NCBI GenBank assembly: GCA_038087875.1
Contig: CM075982.1
Span: 70,122,001-70,186,000 of the forward strand
From: Malacoraja senta
Taxonomy: Eukaryota
DNA length: 64,000 bases
Reading direction: 5' to 3'
Part shown: positions 40,301-54,875 of the stretch, one piece after another
Layout of the letters: each line of letters starts with the position of its first letter
How positions within the stretch are numbered: position 1 is the stretch's first letter
The notes under the pieces: model-generated
Told to the model about the DNA's origin: nothing
Seen by the model: only the letters and a program-made list of their open reading frames with translations
Database searches by the model: none
Program-made: the position numbers and the translations under genes

Positions 40301-43300
40301 TATGTTTGATTGGATTATAAGGGGACCACCCCTATGTAGTTTGGCCCCTCAAGGTTCGTGGACCTATAAAAGGTAGCCCCTTTTGGATCGGTGTCGATCT
40401 TCTGGAAGGGCGCTTTGGATTGCATGACCTTTTGGGCAGTGTCTGCTTGCATGAGTCTGAAGGGCTTGGCCAGGTAGTGACAAGGATCGAACCTGCGGTG
40501 GTTTAGGTATCGTTTCGGGGAATTTGCTGTTCATTCTAAAAATAAAGATTAGTTGGTCCAGTGCTTGATTCAGTGTTTTTTACTGAACTAGACTAAGGGG
40601 GGGAGGGGGTAAGCTTTAGGAGTGTATTTACATATTCCTCTACATACCTTTGAGTGTTTACCTAATTCCACCAATTAAGATATCACCTATTGCCCAAAGT
40701 TCAATCCATTTGCTAGTTACAGCCAATTGTATGCACTCACAATTTTGCTGAACGATAGCCAGAATGACCCACACGCTCACATACATCGATCACCATCTGT
40801 TTCAAGAACTTTATTTTCCAAAATCAGATTCAATTCAAATTTTGATGCCCCTGCTATACCTTCCCTTTAGTTACATTTTCAGATCTACATTGTGGGTGAA
40901 AGGATAAATGAGCAATATGCCCTAGTGTTGCTGATGTGCAGAGCGAGAAGGCTCACAAATTTGTTTTGCTTTTCCTGTCCCCAAGGCAGCATTTCACTGC
41001 ATATTGGCAAAGAAAGGGCATAAAATGCCAGCCTTGCCAGCAAACTCCATAATCACACATACCTATAAAATTAAACATTCAGCAATGCATTATTGGTGGA
41101 TGATGCTGTGATTAAGCCAGAGGTTAAAATTTATTTAGCATGAACGTTTAATAACACAGTACTTACTTTTCTGCTTCTTTTTCTGTGGTGCAAGTGTTGG
41201 CCGCATGAGGATTTCAACTAAAAGCTGTAAAAGAAAGCAGCATGGAACATTATTGAAACAATGGCTCCAAGAGCTACCACAAACAGAGAATAAAAAGATC
41301 TTCTGTTTATTAATAACAGCTCTCCAAGGGCTAAAGGAGACAAAAAATGGACCTGAAGGATTATAAATGATTTAAGGGCATCAACGTGAAATGTTATCCA
41401 TCTCCACTGATGCCGCTCGACAGGCTAAGTATTTCCTGTCGAGCGGCATCAGTTTAGAGATGCAGCATGGAAATATGCTCTTCAGCCCACCAAATCCATA
41501 CCAACCATTTAATTTTCATCCTGCACTCAAACAATTTTCCATCCCGCACTCAAATTCACTTGGACCAATTTCCATCCTGACACGGTCGTGCAGCGGTAGA
41601 GTTGCTGCCTTACAGCGAATGCAGCGCCGGAGACCCGGTTTCGATCCCGATTACGGGTGCTGTCTGTACAGAGTTTGTACGTTCTCCCCGTGACATGCGT
41701 GGGTTTTTTCCGAGATCTTCTGTTTCGAAAGACGTACAGGTTTGTAGATTAATTGGCTTGGTAAATGTAAAAATTGTCCCTAGTGGGTGTAGGATGGTGT
41801 TAATGTGCGGGGATAGTTGGTCGGCGTGGATCCGGTGGGCCGAAGGCCCTGTTTCCGTGCTGTATCTCTAAACTAAACTCGAATTCACTTGGACCATCTC
41901 CGATACCACCCTCCCCTTTCGTGATCTCACCGTCTCCATCACAAGAGATAGAATATCGACTGATGTCGATTATAGACCTACTGACTCCCGCAGCTATCTA
42001 GACTACACTTCCCATCCTGCCTCCCCCCCCAATTGCAACAGGGCAGAGTCCCCCTAGACCTCACCTTTCACCCTCTCAGCCGTCATAACCGTCACCCATA
42101 CAGCACATAACCCTCCGAACTTTTCGCCGCCTCCAACAGGATCTACCACATCTTCCCATTTCCACAGAGACTGTTCCCTCCCAACTCCCTGGTTAATTCG
42201 TCCCTTCCCACCAAACCACCCCCTCCCCAGGCACCTTCCCCTGCAACCGCAGGAGATGCAACACCTGTCCCTACACACCTCTCAACTCTGTCCAGGCAGG
42301 TGAGGCAGAGGTTCACTTGCACCTCCTCCAACCTCATCTACTATGTCAGCTGCTCCAGGTATGGACTCTTACATAACGGCAAGACCCAGCGCAGACTCGG
42401 CGGTCGTTTTGCTGAACATCTTCGCTCTGTCATCCTCTGCCTATTTGACCAAAAAAAATTAACTCCCTATTCCCACACTGACCTTCCTTCTACATTGTCA
42501 GTGAGACCAAACGTAAATTGGAGGAATTGCATCTCATATTTCACTTGGGCAGCTTACAACCCAGCATTATGAATGTTGATTTCTCTAACTTCACGTAATG
42601 CTTGCATCCTCTCTCTCTCCGTCCCTCCCCCAGCCAGTTGTCGCCACTTTCAAGTCAAGTTACTTTTATTTTTATAGCATATTTAAAAAACAACTCTCGT
42701 TGACTAATTTACATTGGTGGAGGTACTAACGTTATACAACATTGGTTCAAAGTCGTACTAGTTTTACTGTCGTCCTGTTGAGTTCCTGTCGGTATACTCA
42801 TTATCGCCCAAGATAGACATAAATACTGGAGTAACTCAGCGGGATAGGCAGCATGTCTGGATAGAAGGAATAGGTGACATTTCAGGCTGAGTCCATTCTT
42901 CAGACTTCACCCATTCCTTCTATCCAGAGATGTTGTCTGTTCCACTGTGTTAGTCCAGCATTTTGTGTCTATGTTCGGTATAAACGAGCATCTGCAGTTC
43001 CTTCCTACTACACATTATCACCTATCGCACAGCCAACAATAGCTTATTGTGTGCCCCACATTTCCTTGATATCGTTGCTTTTTGCATATCTTCCATTCAT
43101 TTCCCCTAGGTACTGTCTATATCTCTCGCTCCCCTTTCCCCTGACTCTCAGTCTGAAGAAGGGTCTCAACCCAAAACATCTATTCCTTTTCTCCAGAGAT
43201 GCTGCCAGACCCGCTGACTTACTCCAACCTTTTGTGTCTGTCTTTGGTTTAAACCAGCATCTGCAGTTCCTCCCTACACAACTAACCATCAACCACCTCA

Positions 43301-46300
43301 GCAGCTCAGGCAGCACCTGTGTAAAGAAAAACATTACATTTCAGATTAAAGACCCTTCATCAGAACTGATGAGGTGCGATAGTATTTGTTGCCATTTTTT
43401 GTTTTTATTTCAGATTTTCAGTATCTGCAGTCCTTTTGATTTTTGTTCAGTTACTACAGCAATCAGTTGCAGTGTCTCTGAAGTTCAGAGATGAAAGAAC
43501 CTAGAATTCCCACTGGGATAGGAGAGGATTCACGAAACGATCTTCATTGACAGGACAGCGGTGGAGAGAGTCAACAGGTTCAAGTTCCTGAGCGCACAGA
43601 ACTCTGAAGATATGTCCTAGGCCCAGCACATTGATACAGTCTAAGAAAGCTTACCAATGCCTCTACTTCCTCAGATGATTAAGGAGATTCAGCATGTTGC
43701 AAAAAACTCCTACAGGTATACAGTAGAGAAAATGCTACATCACAGCCTCATTTGGCTTCTCGAAAACACAAGAACGAATGATGCCACAGAAAATAGTGGA
43801 CATTTCCGGTCCATTACGGCTATTGACCTCCTCACTGTCAAAGGGATCTGCAGGAAATGCTGCCTCGGAAAGTCAGTCAATATCAAAGATCCACACCACC
43901 TTGGCCAGACTCTCATCTCACTGCTACCATCAGAAAACAAAAAGCTTTTCACTGTACCTCGGTAAACGTGACAATAAACTACATTGAGAAAGGTGGTGCA
44001 GGAGCCCGAGAACCGTGACCTCCAGGTTCAAGAACAACTTTCTATAACTAACATCCTAATCTCAGAGGCGGAGTTTTCAACAACGGGAGCAGCGAGAATA
44101 TGGAGCAAGCTGGCACAGGAAGTGGTAGAGGCCTGTACAATTATAATGTTTTAAAAATCAGTTGGACAGATTCAGGGATCAAAAACATAGAAAATGGGTG
44201 CAGGAATAGGCCATTCGGCCCTTCGAGCAAGTACCGCCATTCAATATGATAATGGCTGATCATCCAAAATCAGTACTCCGGATAGGAGGGTTTAAGAGGG
44301 ATGTAGACCAAATGCAGCTCAGAAAGACAACTTGGTCAGCATGGACAAGTTGGGCCAAAGAGGTTATTTCTGTGCTATGTGACTATTATTCTACATCTTG
44401 GATGTTATAGCTTCAATCAATATTTCATGTTACAAAACCATTACCCAGCAGTAATTTAATACCAGTTTCCCAGACTCTCCAACTGCTCCAACAGAATATG
44501 GCAGGAAAATCATTTGATGGAATCATTTGGTGTTCTCAATCTTCACAAATGAAGCTGTGTTGACTGCAAAGATGCAAAATAGCAGCTTACATTCACTATT
44601 ACAAGACGGCTACCTTGTGCAAAAACAAACCCAAAGAAAGACTTCACAAAATGAAACATCATTTCATGTGTATAAAATCATGAGGAATAGATTGGGCAGA
44701 TGCACAAAGTCTCTTGCCCCGAGAAGATGAATCGAGGACCAGAGGACATAGGTTTAAGGTGAAGGGAAAATATTTAATAGTAATCTGACGGGTAACTTTT
44801 TCACACAAAGGGTGGTGGGTGTATGGAACAAGCTGCCAGAGGAGGTAGTTGAGACAGGGACAATCTCAACATTTAAGAAACAGTTAGACAGGTACATGGA
44901 TAGGGCAGGTTTGGAGGGATATGGACCAAAAGTGGATAAACCTCACGTGGATAAATGAGAAGTTATTCACTTTGGTGGCAAGAACAAGGCAGATTGTTAT
45001 CTGAATGGTGGGTAAGAAAGAACTGCAGATGCTGTTTTAAATCGAAGGTAGACACAAAATGCTGGAGTAACTCAACGGGACAGGCAGCATCTCTGGAGAG
45101 AAGGAATGGGTGACGTTTCAGGTCGAGACTCTTCAGACTGATATGAATGGTGTCAGATTAGGAAAAGGGGAGGTGCAACGAGACCTGGGCGTCCTTGTAC
45201 ATCAGTCACTGAAAGTAAGCATGCAGGTACAGCAGGCAGTGCAGAAAGTAAATGGCATGTTGGCCTTCATAGCGAGAGGATTTGAGTATAGGAGCAAGGA
45301 GGTCCTACTGCAGTTGTACTGGGCCCTGGCGATATCACACCTGGAGTATTGTGTGCCGTTTTGGTCTCCTAATTTGAGAAAGGACTTTCTTGCCATTGAG
45401 GGAGTGCAGTGGAGGTTCACCAGGTTAATTCCCGGGATGAACGAGAGAAGGCAGGGTTATTGATTGGGGACGATCAGTCATGATCACAATGAATGGCGGT
45501 GCTGGCTCGAAGGGCCGAATGGCCCCCTCCTGCACCTATTTTCTATGTTTCTATGCCAGGATTGACATATGATGAAAGAATGGATTGACTGGGCTTATAA
45601 TCACTGGAACTCAGAAGGATGAGAGGGTATCTTATAGAAACATAAATTAAGGGATTGGACAGGCTAGATGCAGGAAAAATGTTCCCCTTGTTGGGGGATT
45701 CCAGAACCAGGGGTCACAGTTTAAGAATAAGGGGTAGGCCATTTAGGACTGAGATGAGGCAAAACGTTTTCACCCAGAGAGTTGTGAATCTGTGGAATTC
45801 TGTGCCACAGAAGGCAGTTGAGACCGATTCACTGGATGTTTCCAAGAGAGAGTTAGATTTAGTTCTTACGGCTAACGGTATCAAGGGATATGGGGAGAAA
45901 ATGGGAACAGGGTATTGATTTTGGATGATCAGCCATGATCATATTGAATGGCAGTGCTAACTCTTAGGGCTGAATGGCCTACTCCTGCACCTATTTTCTA
46001 TGTTTCTGCACACAGGCCGGTGGGACGAGTGTAGCTGGGATATGTTGGCCGGTGTGTGCAAGTTGGGCCGAAGGCATGTTTCCACTGTATCACTCTATGA
46101 CTATCCGTGATCGTACTCTGTCCTACAGGCAATGAAAAGCTGAGCAGGCCAATATCTAGTGTTTACAATGCTAATTATGCTTCTAAACTCAATATACAAT
46201 ACAATTTACAATTTATACAGTACAAACACGCATTAGCTGGATACTGGTCAGTATTCAACAGGCAAAGAAAGGAATAATATCTTGAGGAAAAAAACCTAAT

Positions 46301-49300
46301 GATAAAAGTTATCCCTCTGTTCTCACTATTCAAGATTTTAAACTTTCAGCAAGATAAATGATTTTGCTTGTCGAATGGTACTTCATAGCAGCTCATTGTT
46401 CCAAAGTGTTTGATAAAATATGTTATTCATATTCTAAAATACCTTCAGTGTATTACTCACAAGCTATGTATATTACTTGTTGCAATACTTACATCTACTC
46501 CACCAAAAAGATCGAAAACGTGCGTGTTGGGGAATTTGGATTCTTGGGCACCTTTCCCATCCTCTGTCACAAATGCCATTGCTTCCATCGAGAGGAGTGG
46601 AGCAATTTCCTACACACACAAGGGCAAAGAATGAAACATTAAACCCCAGCCAACCAAACCTAAGCAGCCAAATCTATTCATTCTAGCCCACCCTGATGAA
46701 ACGTTTCTTCTTGGGCTGGGTGTGGAACTACAATGTACACAATTCTAGACCAAGACAGATTATTGACCAAAATGTGTCCTCCTTTCAGAACTTAACTTAC
46801 TTATATTATCCATCATCTTCAATTTGTTTCAAGAGTTTCAAAATCATTATTTTCTGTATTCCTAACATTCCCATATTGTAAAATTGCCAAACAACAGTAC
46901 TCAGGCATGAGGGGGAAAAATGAAAAAAGAGGAATAGAGATGTGTGTCCAGAATTTTTTTGATAATCGTACCTTGAAATGACAGTTTTCTTGCCAATTTA
47001 CCCTTCATTTATACTGTCATTTATTTTATTGTACCTTAAAATAACTCATTTTACTTGCTTGTTACTTCTTAATTTACACAGAACATTTGTGATAATCATT
47101 CCTTAAAATGACACCCTCCTTGCTTGTTTACACTTAAGTCATATCGAAAATATTTTATATTACACCTATACCTACTTGTAACATGATACCTGTTCCTTGC
47201 TTGTTTACCTTAATTAGAGAGAAGTATCCTTTACCAATATATTTAAACGCTAAATGAATTTCAAATCTAACTCTTAACAGTTAGGATGAAAATGAAGATC
47301 CAACTACTTCAAAGATGATCATATTGTGCTACATACGTACTCAATCAAATTAAGTACAGTGGACAAAATATTAAAATCTCAACCTGGAATTTAAGACATT
47401 ATTTGAAAATAAGTTCCCAAAATTTAAAATTAAAGATGCCATTTTTAAAAATCTATTGTCAAATTATTTAGAAAAAGAAAAATAAGCGAATAATGTTTTA
47501 TCTTCTTTGGATTGCTGGACATTTTCTGATCGCCAGAATTTGTAAAGTCAGTGACTATTAAGGAATACTATTTGCTAACTCATTGGCGAGTCCAAGCTGG
47601 AAATGTAACGATACATTGTATTGCGCGGCCAGAGGGCATCCCGACGGGCCGCGGCCGTGGACTGGGAACGCGGCCAGAGGCCTTTATCGAAGGCGCCGTG
47701 GTCTCGATGCCTGCCGGATCGCCGCGTAGAACCCCGAAAGTGTGTTGCACCATAACTTACCTTTAAGATTCCTTGGCACAGCAAGAGATCATCATTGTTG
47801 GGTTGGCTGTTTTCATATAATTTCTGCACCAGATGAGGGATGCCATTCCATTTTGCAATCTTATCCCTCTCTCGGAGCAAGGAATCTGGAATCTGCAAAC
47901 AGAAGAAATCAGCTGTATATCGGAGGAGCTCCTAATAGCCTATTACGTGCTCCAACCTAAGGCTGTGATGAGGAAATTCAGACATGGAAAATGGATATTG
48001 TTGGAGTCCTACAGCGTAAAAATAGGTTATTTCGGCCACATTTATTTCAGCCATCAACCATCCAACCATCAACTGATTCCATTTACCTGCAAGTTATGTT
48101 GCCTAATAGGCATTGACTATTCAATGTTGGGAGAGAAACTGCTTCCACCACCTTCTCAGGCAGTGTCACATCACTAACCATGTCACATACATTCACATCC
48201 AAATCATTAATACAAATAGCAAAGGGTGGACACAGCAAAGGTCCGTGAGAACCACTTGTTACACGCTCCAGTCTGATCAGGCCCGCAGGAATTTACCTAC
48301 CTTAATGTGCTTGAAGGCCTCCAGCACCTCCTTTTCAGCAAATGAGGATTCTGCAAACATTATTATTAAGCACCAATCTGACAATCACTCCATACTAGGT
48401 TATGTTATTTTTTTGTAAAAAGCACAGGCACAGACCAGATAAATTTATAGTGCACTGAGAAAAAGTGGAGAAAGATCATCAATGCGTCATTTGGGTTTGG
48501 GGACAAATTCAAGGGACATGGATAGTTACTGATGAGCTGACTCAACTTTAATCTTCCACCACATCAATTCTGGCTGAACATTAGTGAAGCACAGATGTTT
48601 AAAAAAAAAAAATCCTGGCCATCATTACCGACAACTAGTCGACATTTTGAATTTCCAGCTTGTATTGCCATGGATTATTACTCCAGTACTTTAAACAATG
48701 CACTGCCACTATGTAATGCAGTTTAAAGATGGGTTCCGACCACATACGTCACCTATTCCTTTTCTCCAGAGATGCTGCCCAACCCGTTGAGTTACTCCAG
48801 CATTTTGTGTCTATCTGCACTGCCTCCAAATCCTGATAAATATTTCAGCATTCAATTTTAGTTAAGACTAGACCAAGTGGGGACCCTCAACGCAATATTC
48901 CACCACTCACCCATAGCCCCCAATTGCGCAGGTGCGGCTGACGGGTTCCCGTTGCGACGCCAGAGATTCCCGTTGTGCCGCGAGTCACGGCAACCCTCCC
49001 CCAACTGCACAGGGACGGCCGGCAAGTGGGAGCGCAGCTACGACATTTTAAAAGTTTAAAATGGCAATAACGTAAAATATAAGATCAATGTAAACACATC
49101 TCACTCTCCCTCTTCAGTCCCCTATTCCTCTCCTCCATTATCCTCTCCCCACCCTCCACCAACCCTCCTCCTCCGCTCACCACCTCCCTCCCCTTCTCTC
49201 TCTTCCCCTTCCCCTTCTCTCTCTTCTCCCTCCCCTCCTTCATTACCTCGCTTACTCCCTCTCCTTCCTCGCTCTTCTTTACCCTCCTCCCCTCCACCAC

Positions 49301-52184
49301 TACTCCCTCTCCTTTCCCCTACCCTGTGATACCATAACCTCTCTCCTCTCCCCCTCCTATCCCCACCCCCCCACTCTCCCTCCTTACCTTCCCCACTACC
49401 CTCCATCCCCACTACCCTCCATCCCCACTCCCGCCCTCCTCTCCCTCCCCTTCTCCCCTACTCTCCCTCCCCCACTTTCCCCTCCCTCTCTCCCTACCTC
49501 CTCTCCCTCAATCCACCCACTCTCTCTCCTCACCTCCCCAGGATCACGATGTAAACCATCGCCAGCCACGTTTTCTCCACAACGTCGGCGATGAAGTTGT
49601 ACTTGAGGCAGGGGCTGTCGGGGGGGGGGGGGGGATGCGTGCCGAGGGGCCTGGAGCCAGGGGAGGGAGAGGCCGAGGCCTGGTCCATGCCCTGGGTCCC
49701 GCTCCTCTCCCTCCCCGCGGGCCCGGAGCAGAAGCGCCGCCGCCCCCAGACCTAGCCGTAGTCTCAGCGCCGCGGTCATTTCAAAACCTGTACTTGAGGC
49801 GGGGGCTGTTGGTTAGTTTTAAAAAACCTAAACACAATGTTAGCTACTAATGAAAATGGAAGAATTTGATTAAAACTGAGGGTTTTTTTTTAGAAGCGTT
49901 TAAAAAAAATGTAAATGAGATTCGGGATACCATTGTGACGTCAAACGCGGCTGACGGGCAGGGCAAGTGGAAAATTGTTTTTGTAAAGTAAAAAATGTCA
50001 ATTACTTGCAAAATATACCATCAATCTGAACAAAACTTGGCCAATGTACACCCCATGACAATGGTGAGTAAAGTGGGGCAAAAATTGTAGCACTATCCTG
50101 TACCGTTTTGGCGGAGTTTCTAGGACTCACTCATACGCAAACAAACAAACAAGATGAGAGTTTTAGTAATATAATAATGTAGAAGATAATACTACTGGGT
50201 ACGAAGCTAATAAGATATGTGCAGTCTGCTGCCCGACCCACTGAGTTACTCCAGCATTTTGTGTCTATCTGTACTGCCTCCAAATCCTGGTAAATGTTTC
50301 AGCATTAGTTTTTAGTTAAGATAATACTACTGGGTACGAGGCTAATATATGTGCAGACTGTAAATTCTGCAAATGTTACACTCTCGGTCACACAAATAGA
50401 GATGGGAATCTATTGTATGTCTTAATCACGAAGATCCAAGATACCACTAGGGGGCACCGACGATGGCAGGCTAGCCAACAGTCTGTCTTTTCTTTTTGTT
50501 GTTGTTATTTTTAGTGTGTTTTAAAAGTATGCGTTAATGTTCTGTGGTTTGTTTTATGTGAGGGGTGGGGGGTGGGGGAGGAGGTCAGGGGAAACTTTTT
50601 TATTTTCAATCTCTTACCTTGCCGTAGATGCGATTGTTTTCTGGATCGTATCTCCGGTCGCTCTGCGACCTAACATCATGGAGCTGGTGCCTTGCTCAGG
50701 AATGACTTTGAGCCCCACTGCGGGGACGTGGACTTACCATCGGAGCCGATCCTTTGCCTGGGATCAACACTCCAACCGCGGCCTGCAGATTTCACCATCA
50801 AGGAGCTCGCAGTCTCGGGTGGAGACCGATGTCGGGAAGCTCCAAACGACGCAGAAGGTTTCGACCAGCCCCAACCCGGGGTCAGATCGCCCGGCGCGGG
50901 GGAGCTGACATTCCTCCCCCCCCCCCCCACCCCCGGATGCAGGAGCTCGATCGCCTCGACGCGGAGGGCTTGACCGCCGGCCACGGAAGCCAACGGAAGG
51001 CTCGAGGCCCCTGACCGCACGGGAGAACAAAGAAGGGAAGAGATTGAACTTTTTTTCCACTTTCCATCAGTGAGGAATGTGGAGGAGTACTGTGGTGGAT
51101 GTTCATGTTAAAATGTATTATGTGTGTTCTGTTGCTTTTTATTGGTATGACTATGGCAAATGAAATTCCTTGTATGTTGCAAAACATACTTGGCTAATAA
51201 AGTATGATTATGATTAATATGAAATGTTCTGCTAATTGGGAGGTGGCAGAAATAGGGTACGCAGAAAGATAATCACAACCGTGTTGAATGGAGCAGGCCT
51301 AGTTTTAAACTGCTTTTACCCAATTCATTTTCCTGTGCTTCTATCACCAAGGCTGGGGATGTATTTCTCAAAGTTCTTGGGTTTGCATAATCCTATAGAA
51401 CCTACTTGACAATGCAAAACCTCATGCTTTACCTATTATGATGAGACAAATAAGATGGGTCGATTGGCAGAAAAGAAAAAAATGTTTCAACAAAATTAGT
51501 AATAGTGCAGTCAAAATGTAGTAACATGGGTGATCATGGAACTGCAAATGCTGTTTGGACAGAAACAATGACAGCAAGTTGACAGCTTATTGTTCCAGTA
51601 GAGATCAAAGTCCCCATTTTTACGCTTAAATTTGCTCCTGGTGATATGCATCTAGCCTGAATTTACTTTGTAAATACAATCGATTTTATTTTTTATTTTA
51701 CGCCAAACATTTCGACTATAATTCAAAATTAACCTTCCGTTATCCAAGATTTATTTGCACGAATGATACGCCCACGAATGAAGCTAATACTATTAGTCAT
51801 TCGCCTCAAAATATCCATCCCCTGCCGCCGCCGTAACACTTGGTGCCAAGTTGTTACCCTGCACCCCGTTGAGGTGGACAATCACCCCCGAAATAATGCG
51901 CAGCCAACACTTGCCTTCCACCGAAACCTGACCAACAGCGGCAACATCCACCCCCTCCCGCATCCAAATCACAATCATCGCTTTGGCCGCTGCAAAATCG
52001 AGTACCCGGCTTTACAGGGCCCTTCCGACAAGTTAAGTTATCTCATCCCCTGGCCTACCTGCGAGACTCTGGTGGGCCCATGCCCCGTGTAGCGACCCTG
52101 TTGAAGGCGAGGGACGATATTGTGGTGGCGAACACAACGAGATACGGCGCTAGAGAGCTCCGGAGGCCCAGCCGCCGCCGCCAT
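4259..52184 (-). CDS. TRPC4AP: TRPC4-associated protein (TRUSS; DDB1-CUL4 substrate receptor), complete 19-exon CDS span, 2331 nt, 776 aa plus stop
   Basis: Nineteen exons translated by hand. They join in frame across GT-AG introns and match recalled human TRPC4AP peptides (e.g. LQELEEWYTWLDNALVLDAL, FWQARAVESFLRG, ENVSCLNTSLVILMLARRK). Confidence 0.97.
5754..5960 (-). CDS. TRPC4AP: TRPC4AP exon 18
   Basis: ENVSCLNTSLVILMLARRKGKLPFYLNALRGKELSEKYPGFLLNNFHRLLRFWQEHYLNKDKDSTCLEN; ctcag/gtaag. Confidence 0.96.
7172..9727 (+). mobile_element. Degenerate Tc1/mariner (DD34E) transposon, left end truncated, interrupted by a nested element
   Basis: Frameshifted transposase fragments (VKHGGGGVMAW, LQQDN, WPSQSPDLNPIE); the right TIR ends GGGCACTG|TA. 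Confidence 0.92.
8570..9510. mobile_element. Non-autonomous DNA transposon (hAT-like) nested in the Tc1 right TIR
   Basis: Perfect 14-bp TIR CAGAGCTGCCAAGT/ACTTGGCAGCTCTG; 6-bp TSD TATGGT at 8564-8569 and 9511-9516. Confidence 0.85.
11316..11428 (-). CDS. TRPC4AP: TRPC4AP exon 17
   Basis: (V)AEVISQCCLLSYMSHVENRLSFLFRLINIIQVQTLTQ; gttcag/gtaaa. Confidence 0.94.
12666..13260. mobile_element. GC-rich PIF/Harbinger-type MITE
   Basis: Imperfect TIRs of about 40 bp (AGGCTCTGTCTTACCTGTTTGCGGTCATCGGCGGTGAAACG versus reverse-complemented AGGCCTGTCTCACGAGTCTGCGGTCATTGGCGGCGAAACG); 3-bp TTA TSD on both sides. Confidence 0.8.
14030..14141 (-). CDS. TRPC4AP: TRPC4AP exon 16
   Basis: FQIFLNQINNSLVDSNMLVRCIVLSLDRFESQTDVVK; gtttag/gtatg. 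Confidence 0.94.
15621..15761 (-). CDS. TRPC4AP: TRPC4AP exon 15
   Basis: HILFCIIDSECKSRDVLQSYFDLLGELMKFNIDAFRRFNKYVNTEEK; ttgcag/gtgag. Confidence 0.96.
17578..17668 (-). CDS. TRPC4AP: TRPC4AP exon 14
   Basis: FWQARAVESFLRGVTSYADQMFLLKRGLLE; ttgtag/gtgag. Confidence 0.96.
18078..18161 (-). CDS. TRPC4AP: TRPC4AP exon 13
   Basis: SLICDGKKGLLSRLLQVMKKEPVESSF(R); ttccag/gtgag. Confidence 0.95.
19000..19101 (-). CDS. TRPC4AP: TRPC4AP exon 12
   Basis: NKYLLLNSQELNELSVISLRANIPEVEAVVNTD(R); ttcag/gtacac. Confidence 0.94.
20319..23866 (+). mobile_element. Composite non-autonomous DNA transposon (hAT-like), copy 1
   Basis: CAGGGC...GCCTG termini; near-TSD TATCTC/TACCTC; subterminal ccgggcaacc motifs; internal Penelope and SINE cargo. 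Confidence 0.75.
21737..22600 (+). mobile_element. Non-autonomous retroelement with (ATTGT)n tail
   Basis: AATAAA followed by an (attgt)n tail; duplicated TTGAGT at the flanks; absent from copy 2 of the composite; same family as 63561-64000. Confidence 0.7.
23929..23987 (-). CDS. TRPC4AP: TRPC4AP exon 11
   Basis: EISLKIQFLRLLQSFSDHH(E); ccacag/gtgag. Confidence 0.94.
24880..28017 (+). mobile_element. CR1-clade LINE, near full-length ORF2 (APE and RT), frameshifted
   Basis: APE motifs (MNARSI, VGITETWL); RT motifs (QHGFMKGKSCLTNL, YLDFQKAF, GVPQGSVLGP, ADDTKL); CR1 C-terminus (LVRPHLEYCVQFWSP); (TTCTATGT)n tail. Confidence 0.95.
28249..30309 (+). mobile_element. 5'-truncated non-CR1 LINE (RT ORF 28548-29855) inserted into an antisense CR1
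   Basis: RT motifs NYRPIAL, QFGFK, CFIDASKAFDRV, LSPVLFNLYIDDL, YADDL, KYLG; AATAAA and (ATT)n tail. CR1 sequence resumes on both sides. Confidence 0.9.
32243..32371 (-). CDS. TRPC4AP: TRPC4AP exon 10
   Basis: VHKMLAEFCLIPGLNNLFDKLIWRKHSTNHVLHGQNQICDCSP; tttcag/gtaag. Confidence 0.95.
33040..33182 (-). CDS. TRPC4AP: TRPC4AP exon 9
   Basis: SADESVLAASQLRSRLPQSMKIMHEIMYKVEVLYVLCVLLMGRQRNQ; attcag/gtaag. Confidence 0.92.
35295..35486 (-). CDS. TRPC4AP: TRPC4AP exon 8
   Basis: TLLNIPGFIERLCKLATRKVSETAGTSNFLQELEEWYTWLDNALVLDALIHMATEETDQSSST; tttag/gtgcgc. Confidence 0.93.
35874..36075 (-). CDS. TRPC4AP: TRPC4AP exon 7
   Basis: EMIQLEDIPNLTNLVASFDQQQLANFCRILSVTISELDTGNDDKHTLLAKNAQQKKAAGPSRAEINQ; within ORF 35815..36156. 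Confidence 0.95.
36541..36939 (+). mobile_element. CR1 LINE 3' fragment
   Basis: RGDLIETYKI...RTRGHS segment, CR1 3' UTR and (TTCTATGT)n tail. Confidence 0.9.
38271..38399 (-). CDS. TRPC4AP: TRPC4AP exon 6
   Basis: TDGVTKRLSERNDFVLFLFTLMTNKKTFLQTATLIEDILGVKK; ttttag/gtctgt. Confidence 0.95.
39342..39397 (-). CDS. TRPC4AP: TRPC4AP exon 5
   Basis: (M)SEDLIKDCLSILYNTCIC; ttgcag/gtaag. Confidence 0.94.
39926..40644 (+). mobile_element. Putative solo LTR
   Basis: TG...CA ends, TATAAAA at 40365, AATAAA at 40541, no ORF. No TSD was found and the 5' boundary is uncertain. Confidence 0.45.
41167..41224 (-). CDS. TRPC4AP: TRPC4AP exon 4
   Basis: LLVEILMRPTLAPQKKKQK plus 1 nt; ttacag/gtaagt. Confidence 0.93.
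41579..41879 (+). mobile_element. tRNA-derived SINE (HE1/V-SINE-like)
   Basis: tRNA-like head (gcagcggtagag...ggtttcgatccc), V-domain-like ggtgctgtctgtacagagtttgtacgttctcccc, CR1-like 3' tail with (ctaaa)n. Related copies at about 34910-35090, 21500-21660 and 58995-59225. Confidence 0.8.
41883..42600 (+). mobile_element. Penelope-like element fragment (degenerate GIY-YIG region)
   Basis: RQRFTCTSSNLIYYVSCSRYGLLHNGKTQRRLGGRFAEHL. Confidence 0.75.
44935..46006 (+). mobile_element. CR1 LINE fragments with nested short insertions
   Basis: DLGVLVHQSLK, HLEYCV, RTRGHSL motifs and CR1 3' UTR. Confidence 0.85.
46493..46609 (-). CDS. TRPC4AP: TRPC4AP exon 3
   Basis: EIAPLLSMEAMAFVTEDGKGAQESKFPNTHVFDLFGGVD; AG/GTAAG boundaries. 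Confidence 0.95.
47761..47892 (-). CDS. TRPC4AP: TRPC4AP exon 2
   Basis: IPDSLLRERDKIAKWNGIPHLVQKLYENSQPNNDDLLLCQGILK; acceptor tttgcag, donor gtaag; phase 0/0. Confidence 0.92.
48868..50186 (-). mobile_element. Non-autonomous Helitron carrying a captured gene fragment
   Basis: On the minus strand it starts TC...ATTACTAAAA and ends ...CTAG, inserted between A and T with no TSD. The empty site is preserved in the adjacent duplicate (gttaaga|taatactactgg, about 50315-50333). Its ends match the Helitron at 55766-56753. Confidence 0.85.
49534..49779 (-). pseudogene. Captured HTRA2-like (HtrA serine protease) exon fragment inside the Helitron
   Basis: LGLGAAALLL...ASPPPP, then after a 1-nt shift in a 15-C run [28 protein letters not shown](R), followed by the donor GTGAG. 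Recalled human HTRA2 reads [33 protein letters not shown]. Confidence 0.8.
50447..51216 (+). mobile_element. Retroelement related to the 21737-22600 family, with AATAAA and an (ATGATT)n tail
   Basis: Similar layout (T-rich head, G-run, GC-rich body, ttccatca...gtggatgtt 3' block) and a short tandem tail. Confidence 0.55.
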
Positions 52185-52380
52185 TTCCTTCACGACAGAA
52201 AGCTGCTGCCTCAGCCCATCCGCTCTCGCCCATTGGCCTGGCGGCGGCCGCCTTGGCTCCATCCGTCATTCCCATTGGTGGACCCTCCGCGGCCAGGGTC
52301 AAGGGGCACGGGGTGCTCCCGCCATCTGTCCGCGCCTCGCCCGGTCTGTGGTCGCCGCTGCCTCGCTGCTGCTTCTACTG
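51800..52380. promoter_or_regulatory. CpG island at the TRPC4AP 5' end; candidate bidirectional promoter shared with TUBD1
   Basis: GC- and CpG-rich stretch around exon 1, with ATTGG (reverse CCAAT) at about 52232 and 52274. A divergent gene lies on the plus strand. Confidence 0.6.
52059..52184 (-). CDS. TRPC4AP: TRPC4AP exon 1, coding part
   Basis: MAAAAGPPELSSAVSRCVRHHNIVPRLQQGRYTGHGPTRVSQ resembles human ...NILLQLRQGQLTGRGLVRAVQ. ATG context is gaaATGG, donor is GTAGG, and it lies in a CpG island. Confidence 0.88.
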
Positions 52381-52432
52381 CTACACGGTGAAGCTATACA
52401 ACACCAGCAGCAACAGCAGCAATAGCAACAAT

Positions 52433-52466
<34 letters not shown>

Positions 52467-52839
52467 GAGGTGCAAGGGGCGGGTGGTCACCGCTGCCTCT
52501 GCAATACGGTGAAGCTATACAACACCAGCAGCAACAACAACAACAACAACAGAGGTGCAAGGGGCGGGTGGTCGCCGCTGCCTCGCTGCTGCTGCTGTTA
52601 CACGGTGAAGCTATACAACACCAGCAGCAATAACAACAACAACAGAGGTGCAAGGTGCGGGTGGTCACCGCTGCCTCGCTGCTGCTGCTGCAATACGGTG
52701 AAGCTATACAACACCAGCAGCAACAGCAACAACAACAACAACAGCAACAACAACAACAACAACAACAACAGAGGTGCAAGGGGAGGGTGGTCGCTGCTGC
52801 ACGGTGAAGCAATACAACACCAGCAGCAATAGCAACAAT

Positions 52840-52870
<31 letters not shown>

Positions 52871-53303
52871 GAGGTGCAAGGGGCGGGTGGTCACCGCTGC
52901 CTCTGCAATACGGTGAAGCTATACAACACCAGCAGCAACAACAACAGAGGTGCAAGGGGCGGGTGGTCGCCGCTGCCTCGCTGCTGCTGCTGTTACACGG
53001 TGAAGCTATACAACACCAGCAGCAATAACAACAACAACAGAGGTGCAAGGTGCGGGTGGTCACCGCTGCCTCGCTGCTGCTGCTGCAATACGGTGAAGCT
53101 ATACAACACCAGCAGCAACAGCAACAACAACAACAACAGCAACAACAACAACAACAACAACAACAGAGGTGCAAGGGGAGGGTGGTCGCTGCTGCACGGT
53201 GAAGCAATACAACACCAGCAGCAATAGCAACAACAACAACAACAGCAACAACAGAGGTGCAAGGGGCGGGTGGTCGCTGCTGCACGGTGAAGCAATACAA
53301 CAC

Positions 53304-53337
<34 letters not shown>

Positions 53338-53557
53338 AACAACAACAACAGCAGCAGCAGCAACAACACCAGCAACAACAGCAGCAACAGCACCAGCAAC
53401 AACTGGAGATGCAAGGGACGGGTGGTCGCCGCGGCGTCCCTGCTGCAAGGTGAATCAATACAACACCAGCAACAACAGCAGCAGCAGCAACAACAGCAGC
53501 AACAACAACAACAGAGGTGCAAGGGCGGGTGGTCGCCGCGCCATCGCTGCACGGTGA
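52348..53557. repeat. Compound minisatellite of about 11 units (roughly 85-160 bp), each with an internal (CAA/CAG)n tract
   Basis: Repeated unit cggtgaagc(t/a)atacaacaccagc-(caa)n-gaggtgcaagggg(c/a)gggtggtc...gctgc. It explains the polyQ/N/C/L ORFs in the ORF track. Confidence 0.95.
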
Positions 53558-53558
53558 A

Positions 53559-54025
53559 TTAATTCCCGGGATGGAGGGACTGTCATATGCTGAGAGAATG
53601 GAGCAGCTGGGCTTGTACACTATGGAGTTTAGAAGGATGTGCGGGGATCTCATTGAAACATATAAGATTGTTAAGGGCTTGGACATGCTAGAGGCAGGAA
53701 ACAGGTTCCTGATGTTGGGGGAGTCCAGAACCAGGGGCCACAGTTTAAGAATAAGGAGTATCCATTTAGAACGGAGACGAGGAAACACTTTTTCTCACAG
53801 AGAGTGGTGAGTCTGTGGAATTCTCTGCCTCAGAGGGCGGCGGAGGCAGGTTCTCTGGATGCTTTCAAGAGAGAGCTAGATAGGGCTCTTAAAAATAGCA
53901 GTCAGGAGATATGGGGAGAGGGCAGGAACGGGGTACTGATTGGGGATGATCAGCCATGATCACATTGAATGGCGGTGCTGGCTCGAAGGGCCGAATGGCC
54001 TACTCCTGCACCTATTGTCTATTGT
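53559..54025 (+). mobile_element. CR1 LINE 3' fragment
   Basis: LIPGMEGLSYAERMEQLGLY...GDLIETYKIV followed by CR1 3' UTR. Confidence 0.9.
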
Positions 54026-54211: not shown

Positions 54212-54875
54212 TAGACAATAGGTGCAGGAGTAGGCCATTTGGCCCTTCGATTAACAATCTTATAGGTTTCAATGAGATTCCCTCACATCCTTTTAAACTC
54301 CAGAGTGTACAAGCCCAGCTGCTCCATTCTCTCAGCATATGACAGTCCCTCCATCCCGTCAATTAACCTTGTAAACCTACGCTGCACTCCCTCAATAGCA
54401 AGAATGTCCTTCCTCAAATTAGGGGACCAAAACTGCACACAATACTCCAGGTGTGGTCTCACTAGGGCTCTGTACAACTGCAGAAGGACCTCTTTGCTCC
54501 TATATTCGATTCCTCTTGTTATAAAGGTCAACATGCTTACTATAAAGTACCTGCATGCTTACTTTCATAGACAGATGTACAAGGACCCCCAGTTCCCATT
54601 GTACTTCCCCTTTTCCCACCTTGAAGCCATTTAGATAGTAATCTGCCTTCCTGTTTTTGCTACAAAGTGGATAACCTCACATTTATCCGCATTAAACTTC
54701 ATCTGCCATGCATCTGCTCACTCCCCAACCTGTCCAAGTCACCCTGCATTATCATAGCATCCTCCTCAAAATTCACACTGCCACCCAGCTTTGTGTCATC
54801 TGCAAATTTGCTAATGTTACTTTGAATCCCTTCATCCAAATCATTGATGTATATTGTGAATAGCTGCAGTCCCAG
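54212..54875 (-). mobile_element. CR1 LINE RT fragment, antisense
   Basis: ORFs containing FADDTKLGG and LVRPHLEYCVQFWSP. Confidence 0.88.

What the first reader, a model, noticed from the sequence alone, without database searches (positions are those of the whole stretch)
49396..49810. Helitron in TRPC4AP intron 1 has captured an HTRA2-like exon end with its splice donor
Seen in sequence: inside a TC...CTAG Helitron, the minus strand encodes a hydrophobic LGLGAAALLL stretch and ASPPPP. After a one-base shift in a 15-C run it reads [28 protein letters not shown], then GTGAG and GA-rich intron-like sequence. A 22-nt duplicate at about 49789-49810 preserves SPRLKY. Established knowledge: [10 protein letters not shown] begins the HtrA protease domain. 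The transmembrane segment, Pro run and [12 protein letters not shown] pattern ending at a donor fit HTRA2/Omi exon 1 better than HTRA1/3/4. Helitrons are known to capture host DNA. Inference: this is genomic (not retroposed) capture of host HTRA2 by a chondrichthyan Helitron family, which may have spread the fragment to many loci.
Basis: partly seen in the sequence, partly recalled or inferred. Interest (0 to 1): 0.85.

Follow-up and report, generated by a model that had tools for sequence, protein, structure and literature searches.

The report
Helitron copy carrying captured HTRA2 exon
This is one decayed copy of a rolling-circle transposon (Helitron) family that picked up the end of exon 1, the splice donor and the start of intron 1 of the host mitochondrial protease gene HTRA2. 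The family spread that fragment to roughly hundreds of places in skate genomes, which is a known kind of event seen here in a lineage where I found no published description.

Summary

**Cargo.** The minus strand at 49631-49534 reads [32 protein letters not shown], followed by a GTGAGGAG donor.
- Its best solved-structure hit is human HTRA2 (E 2e-7, against 0.009 for HTRA1).
- It is 82% identical to a Leucoraja erinacea HTRA2-like protein.
- In that gene, exon 1 ends at the identical GGGGAG|GTGAGGAG. Its intron 1 opens with the same extreme GA-rich, C-poor DNA as the window.

**Element.** The fragment lies in a 1.3-kb insertion (48868-50186, minus strand).
- A neighbouring paralogous empty site shows that it sits between host A and T, with 5'-TC and CTAG-3' ends and no inverted repeats.
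- The 3' hairpin is not convincing, and a 3-4-nt target duplication cannot be excluded.

**Family.**
- Contigs from six coded organisms show that the fragment and the element ends are highly repeated.
- The family 5' end is A|TCTATATATT.
- Head-to-tail CTAG-TA-TC junctions occur.
- At 12 of 13 places where the family majority differs from this copy, the majority letter equals the skate HTRA2 letter. Two of those places are in the intron.

**This copy.** It is frameshifted in a 15-C run and mutated. No function has been shown.

The scan had already noted HTRA2-carrying Helitrons at eight or more other loci of this genome. I class this as a new member of a known kind.

The parts
48868..50186 (-). 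The whole insertion: a non-autonomous Helitron-like element of 1319 bp, running 5'-TCTTCTACATT ... GGTCTAG-3' on the minus strand.
   Evidence: With the element removed, the flanks align without a gap to the neighbouring paralogous repeat unit (TTAGTTAAGA|TAATACTAC at 50312-50335), at about 91% over 138 nt. It is the only copy in the window.
50174..50186 (-). The 5' terminus of this copy (TCTTCTACATTAT). It is a variant of the family end TCTA, and is preceded by host A.
   Evidence: In four organisms, other copies stop matching at 50173. They continue, on the + strand, as TAGA|TA.. and then with low-agreement AT-rich flank. On the minus strand this is A|TCTATATATTACT (table 7).
49813..50173 (-). 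The 5' backbone of the element. It contains a TGACGTCA motif at about 49935.
   Evidence: Summed contig depth is 3,000-95,000 against about 30 for unique flank. It shows no similarity to the HTRA2 locus.
49789..49812 (-). A 24-nt duplicated piece of the HTRA2 exon (..NSPRLKY), at the 5' edge of the cargo.
   Evidence: 92% identical to 49598-49621 (D9). 21 nt are 100% identical to L001 10290-10310. Contigs of other copies reach 49804-49809 (table 8).
49534..49779 (-). The captured 3' part of HTRA2 exon 1: membrane-segment region, Pro-rich linker and the start of the protease domain. It is frameshifted and carries missense changes.
   Evidence: The DNA alignment runs from L001 10090/10107 to 10374. 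The core is 89% identical to skate and 83% to whale shark. The family majority letter equals the parental letter at 12 of 13 places.
49620..49634 (-). The 15-C run where this copy's reading frame shifts by one base.
   Evidence: Read directly from the sequence and from the two ORFs in different frames. The parental gene has a GC-rich, non-homopolymer stretch here.
49532..49533 (-). The captured splice donor GT, in the context GGGGAG|GTGAGGAG.
   Evidence: The context is identical to the exon 1/intron 1 junction of the L. erinacea gene. The whale shark has AG|GTAAAT at the same place.
49101..49531 (-). A GA-rich tract derived from the start of HTRA2 intron 1. Its 3' limit is uncertain, somewhere in 49101-49260.
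   Evidence: Composition is A .30, C .02, G .59, T .10, against A .26, C .02, G .61, T .11 for the first 1.2 kb of the skate intron 1. Family-majority letters at 49525 and 49515 equal the intron letters of L001. A positional alignment of the tract alone is not better than shuffles.
48868..49100 (-). The 3' backbone, ending in CTAG and followed by host T. It contains a super-abundant module at 48888-48939.
   Evidence: Depth reaches 1.25 million in 48898-42 with loose ends on both sides, which indicates a minisatellite-like module. One contig shows a head-to-tail junction with CTAGACCAAGT between two copies (table 5c).
48773..48867 (.). Left flank: the end of a SINE-like repeat unit into which the element inserted.
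   Evidence: 91% identical to 50227-50321 (D4). Depth is in the millions.
50187..50360 (.). Right flank, plus the next unit of a roughly 135-bp local duplication. This unit provides the paralogous empty site at 50312-50335.
   Evidence: See (D4, D6, D13). Contigs of organisms B and C span 50149-50497, so the insertion is present at the orthologous site in related species (records 24 and 32).
47761..47892 (-). A host exon downstream on the same strand (cag|ATT...AAG|gtaagt), read as TRPC4AP exon 2.
   Evidence: The translation IPDSLLRERDKIAKWNGIPHLVQKLY... resembles the human TRPC4AP N-terminus as I recall it. No tool hit was obtained.

Best explanation
Window 48868-50186 (minus strand) is one old, decayed copy of a non-autonomous Helitron, a rolling-circle DNA transposon. 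Its cargo is a piece of host genomic DNA copied from the batoid HTRA2/Omi gene: roughly the last 250-280 nt of exon 1, the exon 1 splice donor, and several hundred nt of the GA-rich start of intron 1.

**Shown**
- The cargo is HTRA2 DNA that crosses a conserved exon/intron junction.
- The insertion sits at an A|T site with TC...CTAG ends and no inverted repeats.
- The cargo and the ends belong to a family with on the order of 10^2 or more cargo-bearing copies, and many more copies of the ends, in at least six related organisms.
- This copy is inherited at the orthologous site in two related species.
- It has diverged from a master that was closer to the gene.

**Inferred**
- A Rep/helicase transposase supplied in trans mobilised the element by rolling-circle 'peel and paste'.
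- The cargo entered a master copy either by read-through of a 3' end or by template switching or repair. The 24-nt extra HTRA2 piece at the cargo edge favours a template-switch or partial-duplication step.
- The composite was then amplified.

This copy most likely does nothing. Its HTRA2 frame is broken by a 15-C run and by missense changes, and no HTRA2 promoter or start codon is detectable. It lies in sense orientation in an intron, apparently intron 1 of TRPC4AP. Its intact donor could in principle be used in chimeric transcripts, but there is no RNA evidence.
For: **Cargo identity**
- PDB phmmer gives HTRA2 at E 2e-7, better than HTRA1 at 0.009 and HTRA3 at 0.03.
- 23 of 28 residues are identical to L. 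erinacea HTRA2-like XP_055487789.1.
- The DNA alignment of 49775-49480 to L001 10090-10439 runs across the donor.
- The upstream exon part is significant, z 8.7.

**Genomic, not retroposed**
- Exon 1 of the skate gene ends at the identical GGGGAG|GTGAGGAG, and exon 2 lies 3.4 kb downstream.
- The same extreme G/A composition follows the donor in both.
- The family majority letter equals the parental letter at 12 of 13 places, including two intron places. The chance of that is about 2e-5.

**Helitron features**
- The paralogous empty site gives host A | TC...CTAG | T.
- No inverted repeats at the ends.
- The family 5' end A|TCTATATATT appears in 32-115 contigs in each of four organisms.
- A contig carries 3'-CTAG, then TA, then 5'-TC head to tail, and 'goes back about 1290' joints occur in all eight runs.
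- These hallmarks match those described for Helraiser/Helibat (PMC4778049).

**Amplification**
- Unique flank depth is about 30, against 3,000-40,000 over the cargo and up to 10^5-10^6 over the ends.
- 40-80 or more distinct contigs cover single cargo positions.
- Other contigs link the cargo to the 5' backbone (joint 49756 to 50010) and the 3' backbone to the GA tract.

**Independent leads, unchecked**
- Eight or more first-reader notes describe HTRA2-carrying Helitrons elsewhere in this genome.
- Related elements are noted with ALG13 and SAC3D1 exons.
Against: - **Hairpin.** The 3' subterminal hairpin expected of Helitrons is only an imperfect 8-bp stem. It folds no better than shuffles, here (z -0.13; z 0.36 for the 3' 193 nt) and in the related end in L001 (z -0.49).
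- **Target duplication.** 3-4 nt (TCT/TCTT) occur on both sides of the insertion, so a short target-site duplication cannot be excluded. This copy's 5' end differs from the family consensus.
- **3' backbone.** Its most abundant part (48888-48939) also belongs to a minisatellite-like repeat. The high depth there is therefore not all Helitron ends.
- **Short contigs.** No single other copy was seen whole with cargo and both termini.
- **No autonomous partner.** No Rep/Hel element with these termini was examined.
- **Intron alignment.** The GA tract aligned on its own to the skate intron is not better than dinucleotide shuffles.
Confidence: 0.8

Rival explanations
1. The HTRA2 fragment is carried by a repeated element of another kind, not a rolling-circle transposon. 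Candidates are a Pack-type cut-and-paste element making a 3-4-bp target duplication, or a unit of a roughly 1.3-kb tandem or satellite-like repeat that disperses by recombination.
For: - TCT(T) is present on both sides of the insertion.
- No convincing 3' hairpin.
- Head-to-tail joints and a minisatellite module in the 3' part.
- One unchecked first-reader note reads another HTRA2 copy as TIR-bounded (s1-203292).
Against: - No terminal inverted repeats in this copy.
- The ends are TC and CTAG with A and T flanks.
- The family-level 5' end is A|TC, followed by unrelated flanks in about 100 contigs per run, which indicates dispersed insertions.
- The tandem junction reads CTAG-TA-TC, as expected for Helitron ends.
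Confidence: 0.12
2. The copy is functionally exapted. Its captured donor splices to TRPC4AP exon 2 and provides an alternative first or cassette exon, giving a chimeric TRPC4AP isoform.
For: - It is in sense orientation relative to the downstream exon at 47761-47892.
- The donor context is intact.
- ATG 49779 to exon end 49534 is 246 nt, or 82 codons. That frame leaves the exon in phase 0, as a phase-0 exon 2 requires.
- Bat HelibatN3 elements with a captured NUBPL donor do drive chimeric transcripts (PMC4778049).
- The insertion is retained at the orthologous site in two related species.
Against: - No RNA run holding the stretch was available.
- No HTRA2 promoter or 5' UTR similarity was detected in the element.
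- The frame match has a one-in-three chance.
- The copy is decaying like neutral DNA, away from the family majority.
- Orthologous retention is expected for any old intronic insertion.
Confidence: 0.05
3. The HtrA-like reading is either a chance resemblance in GC-rich, low-complexity DNA or a processed (mRNA-derived) HTRA2 retrocopy.
For: The N-terminal part is low-complexity and not significant at protein level. The intron-tract alignment alone is not significant.
Against: - E 1e-12 against skate HTRA2.
- z 8.7 for the upstream exon DNA.
- The similarity stops being coding exactly at the conserved exon 1 end and continues with the parental donor and intron-type DNA, not with exon 2.
- No poly-A tail.
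Confidence: 0.02

Closest known systems
HelibatN3 of vesper bats: a Helitron that captured the NUBPL promoter, six codons and a splice donor (Pritham and Feschotte 2007; Grabundzija et al. 2016, PMC4778049).
   Same: Both are non-autonomous vertebrate Helitrons with 5'-TC/CTAG-3' ends at A|T sites. Each carries the end of a host first exon with its splice donor, and each was amplified to many copies, many of them in introns (for the bat case).
   Different: - The host lineage here is a cartilaginous fish (skate), and the source gene is HTRA2.
- The capture begins inside exon 1, and no promoter or start codon is detectably included.
- Several hundred nt of intron are carried.
- No convincing 3' hairpin and no transcript evidence.
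Gene-fragment-carrying Helitrons of maize and other plants (for example PMC2575219, PMC4528327).
   Same: Genomic (intron-containing) host gene fragments sit between conserved Helitron ends, and subfamilies share ends but differ in cargo. The scan's notes on ALG13 and SAC3D1 cargo in this genome suggest the same pattern (unchecked).
   Different: Plant elements often carry pieces of several genes. Here a single gene's exon-intron junction is seen, in an animal genome.
Pack-MULE or Pack-TIR elements (cut-and-paste transposons carrying host gene fragments).
   Same: A host gene fragment with intron sequence is mobilised and amplified by a DNA transposon.
   Different: Those elements have terminal inverted repeats and fixed-length target duplications. 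This copy has no inverted repeats and has TC...CTAG ends.
The genuine HTRA2/Omi gene, exon 1 (L. erinacea XP_055487789.1; the whale shark locus next to an HSPA12B-like gene).
   Same: The same sequence from the membrane segment through the Pro-rich linker to [19 protein letters not shown], with the same phase-2 donor.
   Different: The window copy lacks the first 30-36 codons or so and all later exons. It is frameshifted, lies in another gene's intron inside a repeat, and is one of many copies.

Membership tests
Helitron (rolling-circle DNA transposon), non-autonomous | 5' end begins with TC | tested here: met
   This copy begins TCTTCTAC at 50186. The family consensus TCTATATATT comes from loose ends at 50173 in four organisms.
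Helitron (rolling-circle DNA transposon), non-autonomous | 3' end is CTRR (here CTAG) | tested here: met
   GGTCTAG ends at 48868, directly abutting the flank as defined by the paralogous empty site. A head-to-tail contig carries CTAGACCAAGT at the junction (table 5c).
Helitron (rolling-circle DNA transposon), non-autonomous | Host A before the 5' end and host T after the 3' end | tested here: met
   On the minus strand the host reads ..GTATTA | element | TCTTAAC... The family-level flank letter next to TC is A (+ strand TAGA|T).
Helitron (rolling-circle DNA transposon), non-autonomous | No target-site duplication | tested here: inconclusive
   TCT(T) occurs at both junctions. It is either the element's own 5' TC(TT) or a 3-4-bp duplication.
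Helitron (rolling-circle DNA transposon), non-autonomous | Palindrome or hairpin about 10-20 nt before the 3' end | tested here: inconclusive
   Only an imperfect 8-bp stem, 8 nt from the end. The fold is no better than shuffles, here or in the related L001 end.
Helitron (rolling-circle DNA transposon), non-autonomous | No terminal inverted repeats | tested here: met
   No inverted pair joins 48868-48900 with 50150-50186.
Helitron (rolling-circle DNA transposon), non-autonomous | A dispersed multi-copy family sharing the termini | tested here: met
   Depth and contig counts in six coded organisms, with flanks beyond the 5' end showing low agreement, which indicates different loci. The 3' end is less clear because of an abundant internal module.
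Helitron (rolling-circle DNA transposon), non-autonomous | An autonomous partner encoding Rep/helicase with the same ends in the genome | not tested
   Other parts of the genome cannot be read with these tools. The only lead is the unchecked note s1-203309, a Rep/Helicase ORF.
HTRA2/Omi exon 1 as the source of the cargo | Best similarity to HTRA2 rather than HTRA1, HTRA3 or HTRA4 | tested here: met
   E 2e-7 (HTRA2), 0.009 (HTRA1) and 0.03 (HTRA3). All ten library hits are HTRA2 exon 1 sequences.
HTRA2/Omi exon 1 as the source of the cargo | Similarity ends at the conserved exon 1 donor and continues into parental intron DNA | tested here: met
   Identical GGGGAG|GTGAGGAG. Matching G/A-rich, C-poor composition. 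Family-majority letters match the intron at two places. The positional alignment of the tract alone is not significant.
Functional HTRA2 gene or paralogue | An intact reading frame with the protease and PDZ exons | tested here: not met
   There is a frameshift in the 15-C run, and W/M/V replace conserved residues. No later exons follow: the GA tract is followed by the element's 3' backbone.
Processed retrocopy | Exons joined without introns, and a poly-A tail | tested here: not met
   The donor and intron-type DNA follow exon 1. There is no exon 2 sequence and no poly-A.

The most novel reading that the evidence does not exclude
Skates may harbour a Helitron family that repeatedly captures the 5' exons of host genes together with their splice donors (HTRA2 here; ALG13 and SAC3D1 according to other notes). 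The route would be insertion next to promoters followed by read-through of the element's weak 3' end.

One trace of this may survive. A relative of this element's 3' end, ending ...TAGTCTAG|T, lies 62 nt upstream of the HTRA2 start codon on the same strand in L. erinacea. The hundreds of donor-bearing copies in introns would then be a standing source of chimeric first exons in a slowly evolving vertebrate lineage.
Probability: 0.2. Interest if true: 0.7.

Novelty: new member of a known kind. Interest (0 to 1): 0.5.

Why it matters
Amplification of host exons by Helitrons is well documented in maize and, among vertebrates, mainly in vesper bats. There, captured promoters and donors create new transcripts.

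This finding shows the same process in skates: a genomic HTRA2 exon-intron junction copied to roughly hundreds of loci and shared by several species. That extends rolling-circle exon shuffling to cartilaginous fishes. In the paper library I searched, no paper mentions Helitron together with HTRA2, and only two mention Helitron and skate, both in passing.

There is also a practical consequence. These copies are a source of false 'HTRA2-like' exons in gene prediction and in homology searches of batoid genomes.

This single copy is ordinary and probably inert.

Tried and rejected
- **Word-indexed protein searches.** Searches with the 52-aa and 127-aa ORFs found nothing. The search with the skate exon 1 piece found only genuine HTRA2 exon 1 ORFs of other vertebrates. 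No other Helitron copy could therefore be fetched as sequence.
- **Other copies nearby.** There is no second copy of the element or of its ends in the window. No 5' backbone is present in the 20-kb skate HTRA2 locus.
- **Captured 5' UTR or promoter.** My by-eye match of the pre-cargo DNA to the HTRA2 5' UTR (AAATGACC..) is no better than shuffles, score 19 against 21 +/- 3.6. I dropped the idea that the 5' UTR, promoter or true start codon was captured.
- **3' hairpin.** Folding was not significant.
- **Whale shark protein.** The HSPA12B-like protein ending in HTRA2 exon 1 looked like a dispersed shark copy. It is the genuine HTRA2 exon 1 fused to the neighbouring gene model.
- **Intron tract.** Its alignment alone is not significant.
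- **Short exons.** Pfam, the protein atlas and PDB gave nothing for the short TRPC4AP-like exons or for the 33-aa HtrA piece in Pfam.
- **RNA genes.** No tRNA or Rfam family lies in 48500-50500.
- **RNA runs.** None were on offer, so expression and splicing were not tested.

Full report
**1. Observation**

On the minus strand, an ORF from ATG 49779 reads MTAALRLRLGLGAAALLL...HASPPPP. A run of 15 C (49620-49634) follows. One base out of frame, the sequence then reads [29 protein letters not shown] and ends at 49534.

After that come GTGAGGAG and about 430 nt of G/A-rich DNA (G 59%, A 30%, C 2%). A 24-nt piece at 49789-49812 repeats 49598-49621 at 92%.

**2. The coding piece is HTRA2**

- phmmer of the 33 residues against all PDB chains gives human HTRA2 at E 2e-7, HTRA1 at 0.009 and HTRA3 at 0.03.
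- An exhaustive search of 1.84 billion representative proteins returned ten hits, all HTRA2 exon 1 sequences.
- One hit is XP_055487789.1, 'serine protease HTRA2, mitochondrial-like' of the little skate Leucoraja erinacea. It is 23/28 identical to the core, E 1e-12.
- The low-complexity upstream part is not significant at protein level. At DNA level it matches skate exon 1 well beyond dinucleotide shuffles: score 51 against 22.9 +/- 3.2.
- The core is 89% identical to the skate exon and 83% to the whale shark exon. The source was therefore a batoid-lineage HTRA2.

**3. The capture was of genomic DNA across a real exon/intron junction**

I fetched the skate gene locus as L001.
- Exon 1 is 10001-10374 and ends GGGGAG|GTGAGGAG.
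- Exon 2 begins at 13788 with cag|G CAC CCG, completing the Arg codon and continuing HPLSGREV. Intron 1 is about 3.4 kb.
- The window fragment aligns from about L001 10090 through the identical donor and into the intron.
- The first 1.2 kb of the skate intron has A .26, C .02, G .61, T .11. The window tract has A .30, C .02, G .59, T .10.
- The whale shark gene has its donor at the same place but with GTAAAT. After that its record reads N, which I left alone.
- Aligned on its own, the GA tract is no better than shuffles. The intron evidence therefore rests on the junction, the composition, and the result in section 5.
- Homology starts near codon 30-36 of the skate gene. I found no significant match to its 5' UTR or promoter.

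**4. The carrier**

The flanks belong to a local duplication of about 135 bp of a SINE-like repeat (D4, D6, D13). With 48868-50186 removed, the joined flanks align without a gap to the next unit, which reads TTAGTTAAGA|TAATACTAC uninterrupted at 50312-50335.

On the minus strand the insertion is host ..GTATTA | TCTTCTACATT ... GGTCTAG | TCTTAAC... This gives 5'-TC, CTAG-3', host A before and host T after, and no terminal inverted repeats. These are the Helitron hallmarks described for Helraiser/Helibat (PMC4778049).

There are two weaknesses:
- TCT(T) occurs on both sides, so a 3-4-bp duplication cannot be excluded.
- The only 3' hairpin is an imperfect 8-bp stem that folds no better than shuffles.

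**5. Family level**

No other copy lies in the window, so I laid public contigs on the stretch at 80% or more likeness.

*Abundance.* In run X1, which matches the unique flank perfectly, single-copy depth is about 30. Summed depth is 3,000-40,000 over the HTRA2 part and 10^5-10^6 over the element ends. Between 40 and 80 or more distinct contigs cover single cargo positions. The tool warns that summed depth is not a copy number. I read it only as an order of magnitude: about 10^2 or more cargo copies, and many more copies of the ends.

*Distribution.* The same pattern holds in six coded organisms (A, B, C, D, F, I).

*Age of this copy.* Contigs of B and C, whose unique flanks differ by about 5%, span 50149-50497. 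The insertion is therefore present at the orthologous site in related species and is old.

*5' end.* In four organisms, 32-115 contigs stop matching at 50173 and continue as TAGA|TA... followed by unrelated AT-rich sequence. This gives a family 5' end of A|TCTATATATTACT on the minus strand. This copy has a variant 5' tip.

*Tandem copies.* Joints that 'go back about 1290' occur in all eight runs. One contig has GATA-CTAGACCAAGT.. between the two sides, which is 3'-CTAG, then TA, then 5'-TC head to tail. Tandem Helitron copies would look like this.

*Cargo linked to backbone.* A joint from 49756 to 50010 links the cargo to the 5' backbone in other copies. Several contigs bridge the 3' backbone to the GA tract.

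*Caveat on the 3' backbone.* Its most abundant part (48888-48939) has loose ends on both sides and short 'goes back 33-35' joints. It is therefore also a minisatellite-like module, and the top loose ends did not show the 3' tip itself.

*Family majority against the parent gene.* Thirteen displayed positions have a family majority letter that differs from this copy. At 12 of them the majority letter equals the letter of the L. erinacea gene. Two of those (49525 and 49515) lie 9 and 19 nt past the last exon base, 49534. By chance one third would match. This shows three things:
- The family descends from the HTRA2 gene.
- The homology extends into the intron.
- This copy is a decayed descendant of a master that was closer to the gene. 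The majority reads [14 protein letters not shown], against [14 protein letters not shown] here and [14 protein letters not shown] in the gene.

**6. The 24-nt duplicate**

21 of its letters are 100% identical to L001 10290-10310, closer to the gene than the in-place copy. Contigs of other copies reach 49804-49809, so the duplicate was probably already present in the master. I read it as a mark of template switching or partial duplication during or soon after capture. That is an inference.

**7. Host context**

Downstream on the same strand, cag|ATT...AAG|gtaagt (47892-47761) encodes IPDSLLRERDKIAKWNGIPHLVQKLY... Upstream, an ORF at about 52080-52185 encodes MAAAAGPPEL..RLQQGRYTGHGPTRVSQ.

Both resemble the human TRPC4AP N-terminus as I recall it, but no tool confirmed this. 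So 'TRPC4AP intron 1' is plausible but not tested.

From ATG 49779 to 49534 is 246 nt. The shifted frame of this copy therefore leaves the exon in phase 0, which is compatible with that downstream exon. No RNA runs were available, so I treat exonisation as a low-probability rival.

**8. Leads and by-products**

- In L001, a relative of the element's 3' end (score 52 against 19.7 +/- 3.5 in shuffles) ends ...ACTTAGTCTAG|T only 62 nt upstream of the HTRA2 ATG, on the same strand.
  - This fits the read-through model of Helitron capture (PMC4778049).
  - However, the module is extremely abundant, and the present cargo lacks that spacer and the first 100 nt of the exon. It is a lead only.
- The whale shark 'HSPA12B-like' protein that ends in HTRA2 exon 1 is an annotation fusion with the genuine neighbouring HTRA2 gene, not a dispersed copy.

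**9. Comparison and novelty**

The closest known case is HelibatN3 of bats, which carries the NUBPL promoter, six codons and a donor.

The mechanism and the kind of event are known. The lineage and the source gene are new as far as the searched library shows: no paper holds both Helitron and HTRA2, and two hold Helitron and skate, both in passing.

The scan itself had already noted HTRA2-carrying Helitrons at eight or more other loci of this genome, along with relatives carrying ALG13 and SAC3D1 exons. Those notes are unchecked. My contig data independently show that the fragment is multi-copy.

**10. Verdict**

This is a new member of a known kind. This particular copy is probably inert.

Noticed in passing
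L001:9830-9938 (L. erinacea HTRA2-like locus): A relative of this element's 3' end, ending ...ACTTAGTCTAG|T, lies 62 nt upstream of the HTRA2 start codon on the same strand. It may be a trace of read-through capture, or a coincidence given how abundant the module is.
   Followed up: partly
L002:39423-39779 and 41802-45782 (whale shark NC_063332.1): The whale shark gene model XP_048456612.1 ('HSPA12B-like') ends in the genuine HTRA2 exon 1. The next model holds the Trypsin/PDZ exons. This is an annotation fusion of two neighbouring genes.
   Followed up: yes
window 48888-48939: A roughly 50-nt module inside the element's 3' backbone is far more abundant than the rest (summed depth about 1.25 million against 30 for single copy). 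Elsewhere it occurs in short tandem arrays ('goes back 33-35' joints), so it behaves as a minisatellite-like repeat shared with, or seeded by, Helitron 3' ends.
   Followed up: partly
window 48701-48867 and 50183-50360: A very abundant SINE-like repeat (depth in the millions in all runs) sits within a local duplication of about 135 bp. The duplication conveniently preserves an uninterrupted copy of the insertion site.
   Followed up: yes
window 49534-49779 with 47761-47892: In this copy's shifted frame, the captured exon (246 nt from ATG 49779) ends in phase 0 and would be in frame with the downstream TRPC4AP-like exon. This is arithmetic only, with no RNA data, and relates to note s1-206984.
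   Followed up: partly
window 52300-53550: Long imperfect triplet arrays (CAA/CAG type on the + strand, giving poly-Q/N/C/L ORFs in all frames) are organised in repeats of about 400 bp. They lie next to the GC-rich candidate first exon of the TRPC4AP-like gene.
   Followed up: no
window 53517-53810 (+) and 54283-54534 (-): Two ORFs carry the ...GLSYAERMEQLGLYT(L/M)EF(K/R)RM... motif. They look like C-terminal remnants of a LINE reverse transcriptase, in opposite orientations.
   Followed up: no
window 8870-9007: This is the only other C/T-rich (G/A-rich on the other strand) low-complexity tract in the window that resembles the captured intron tract (72% over about 150 nt). It is probably an unrelated microsatellite-like sequence.
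   Followed up: no
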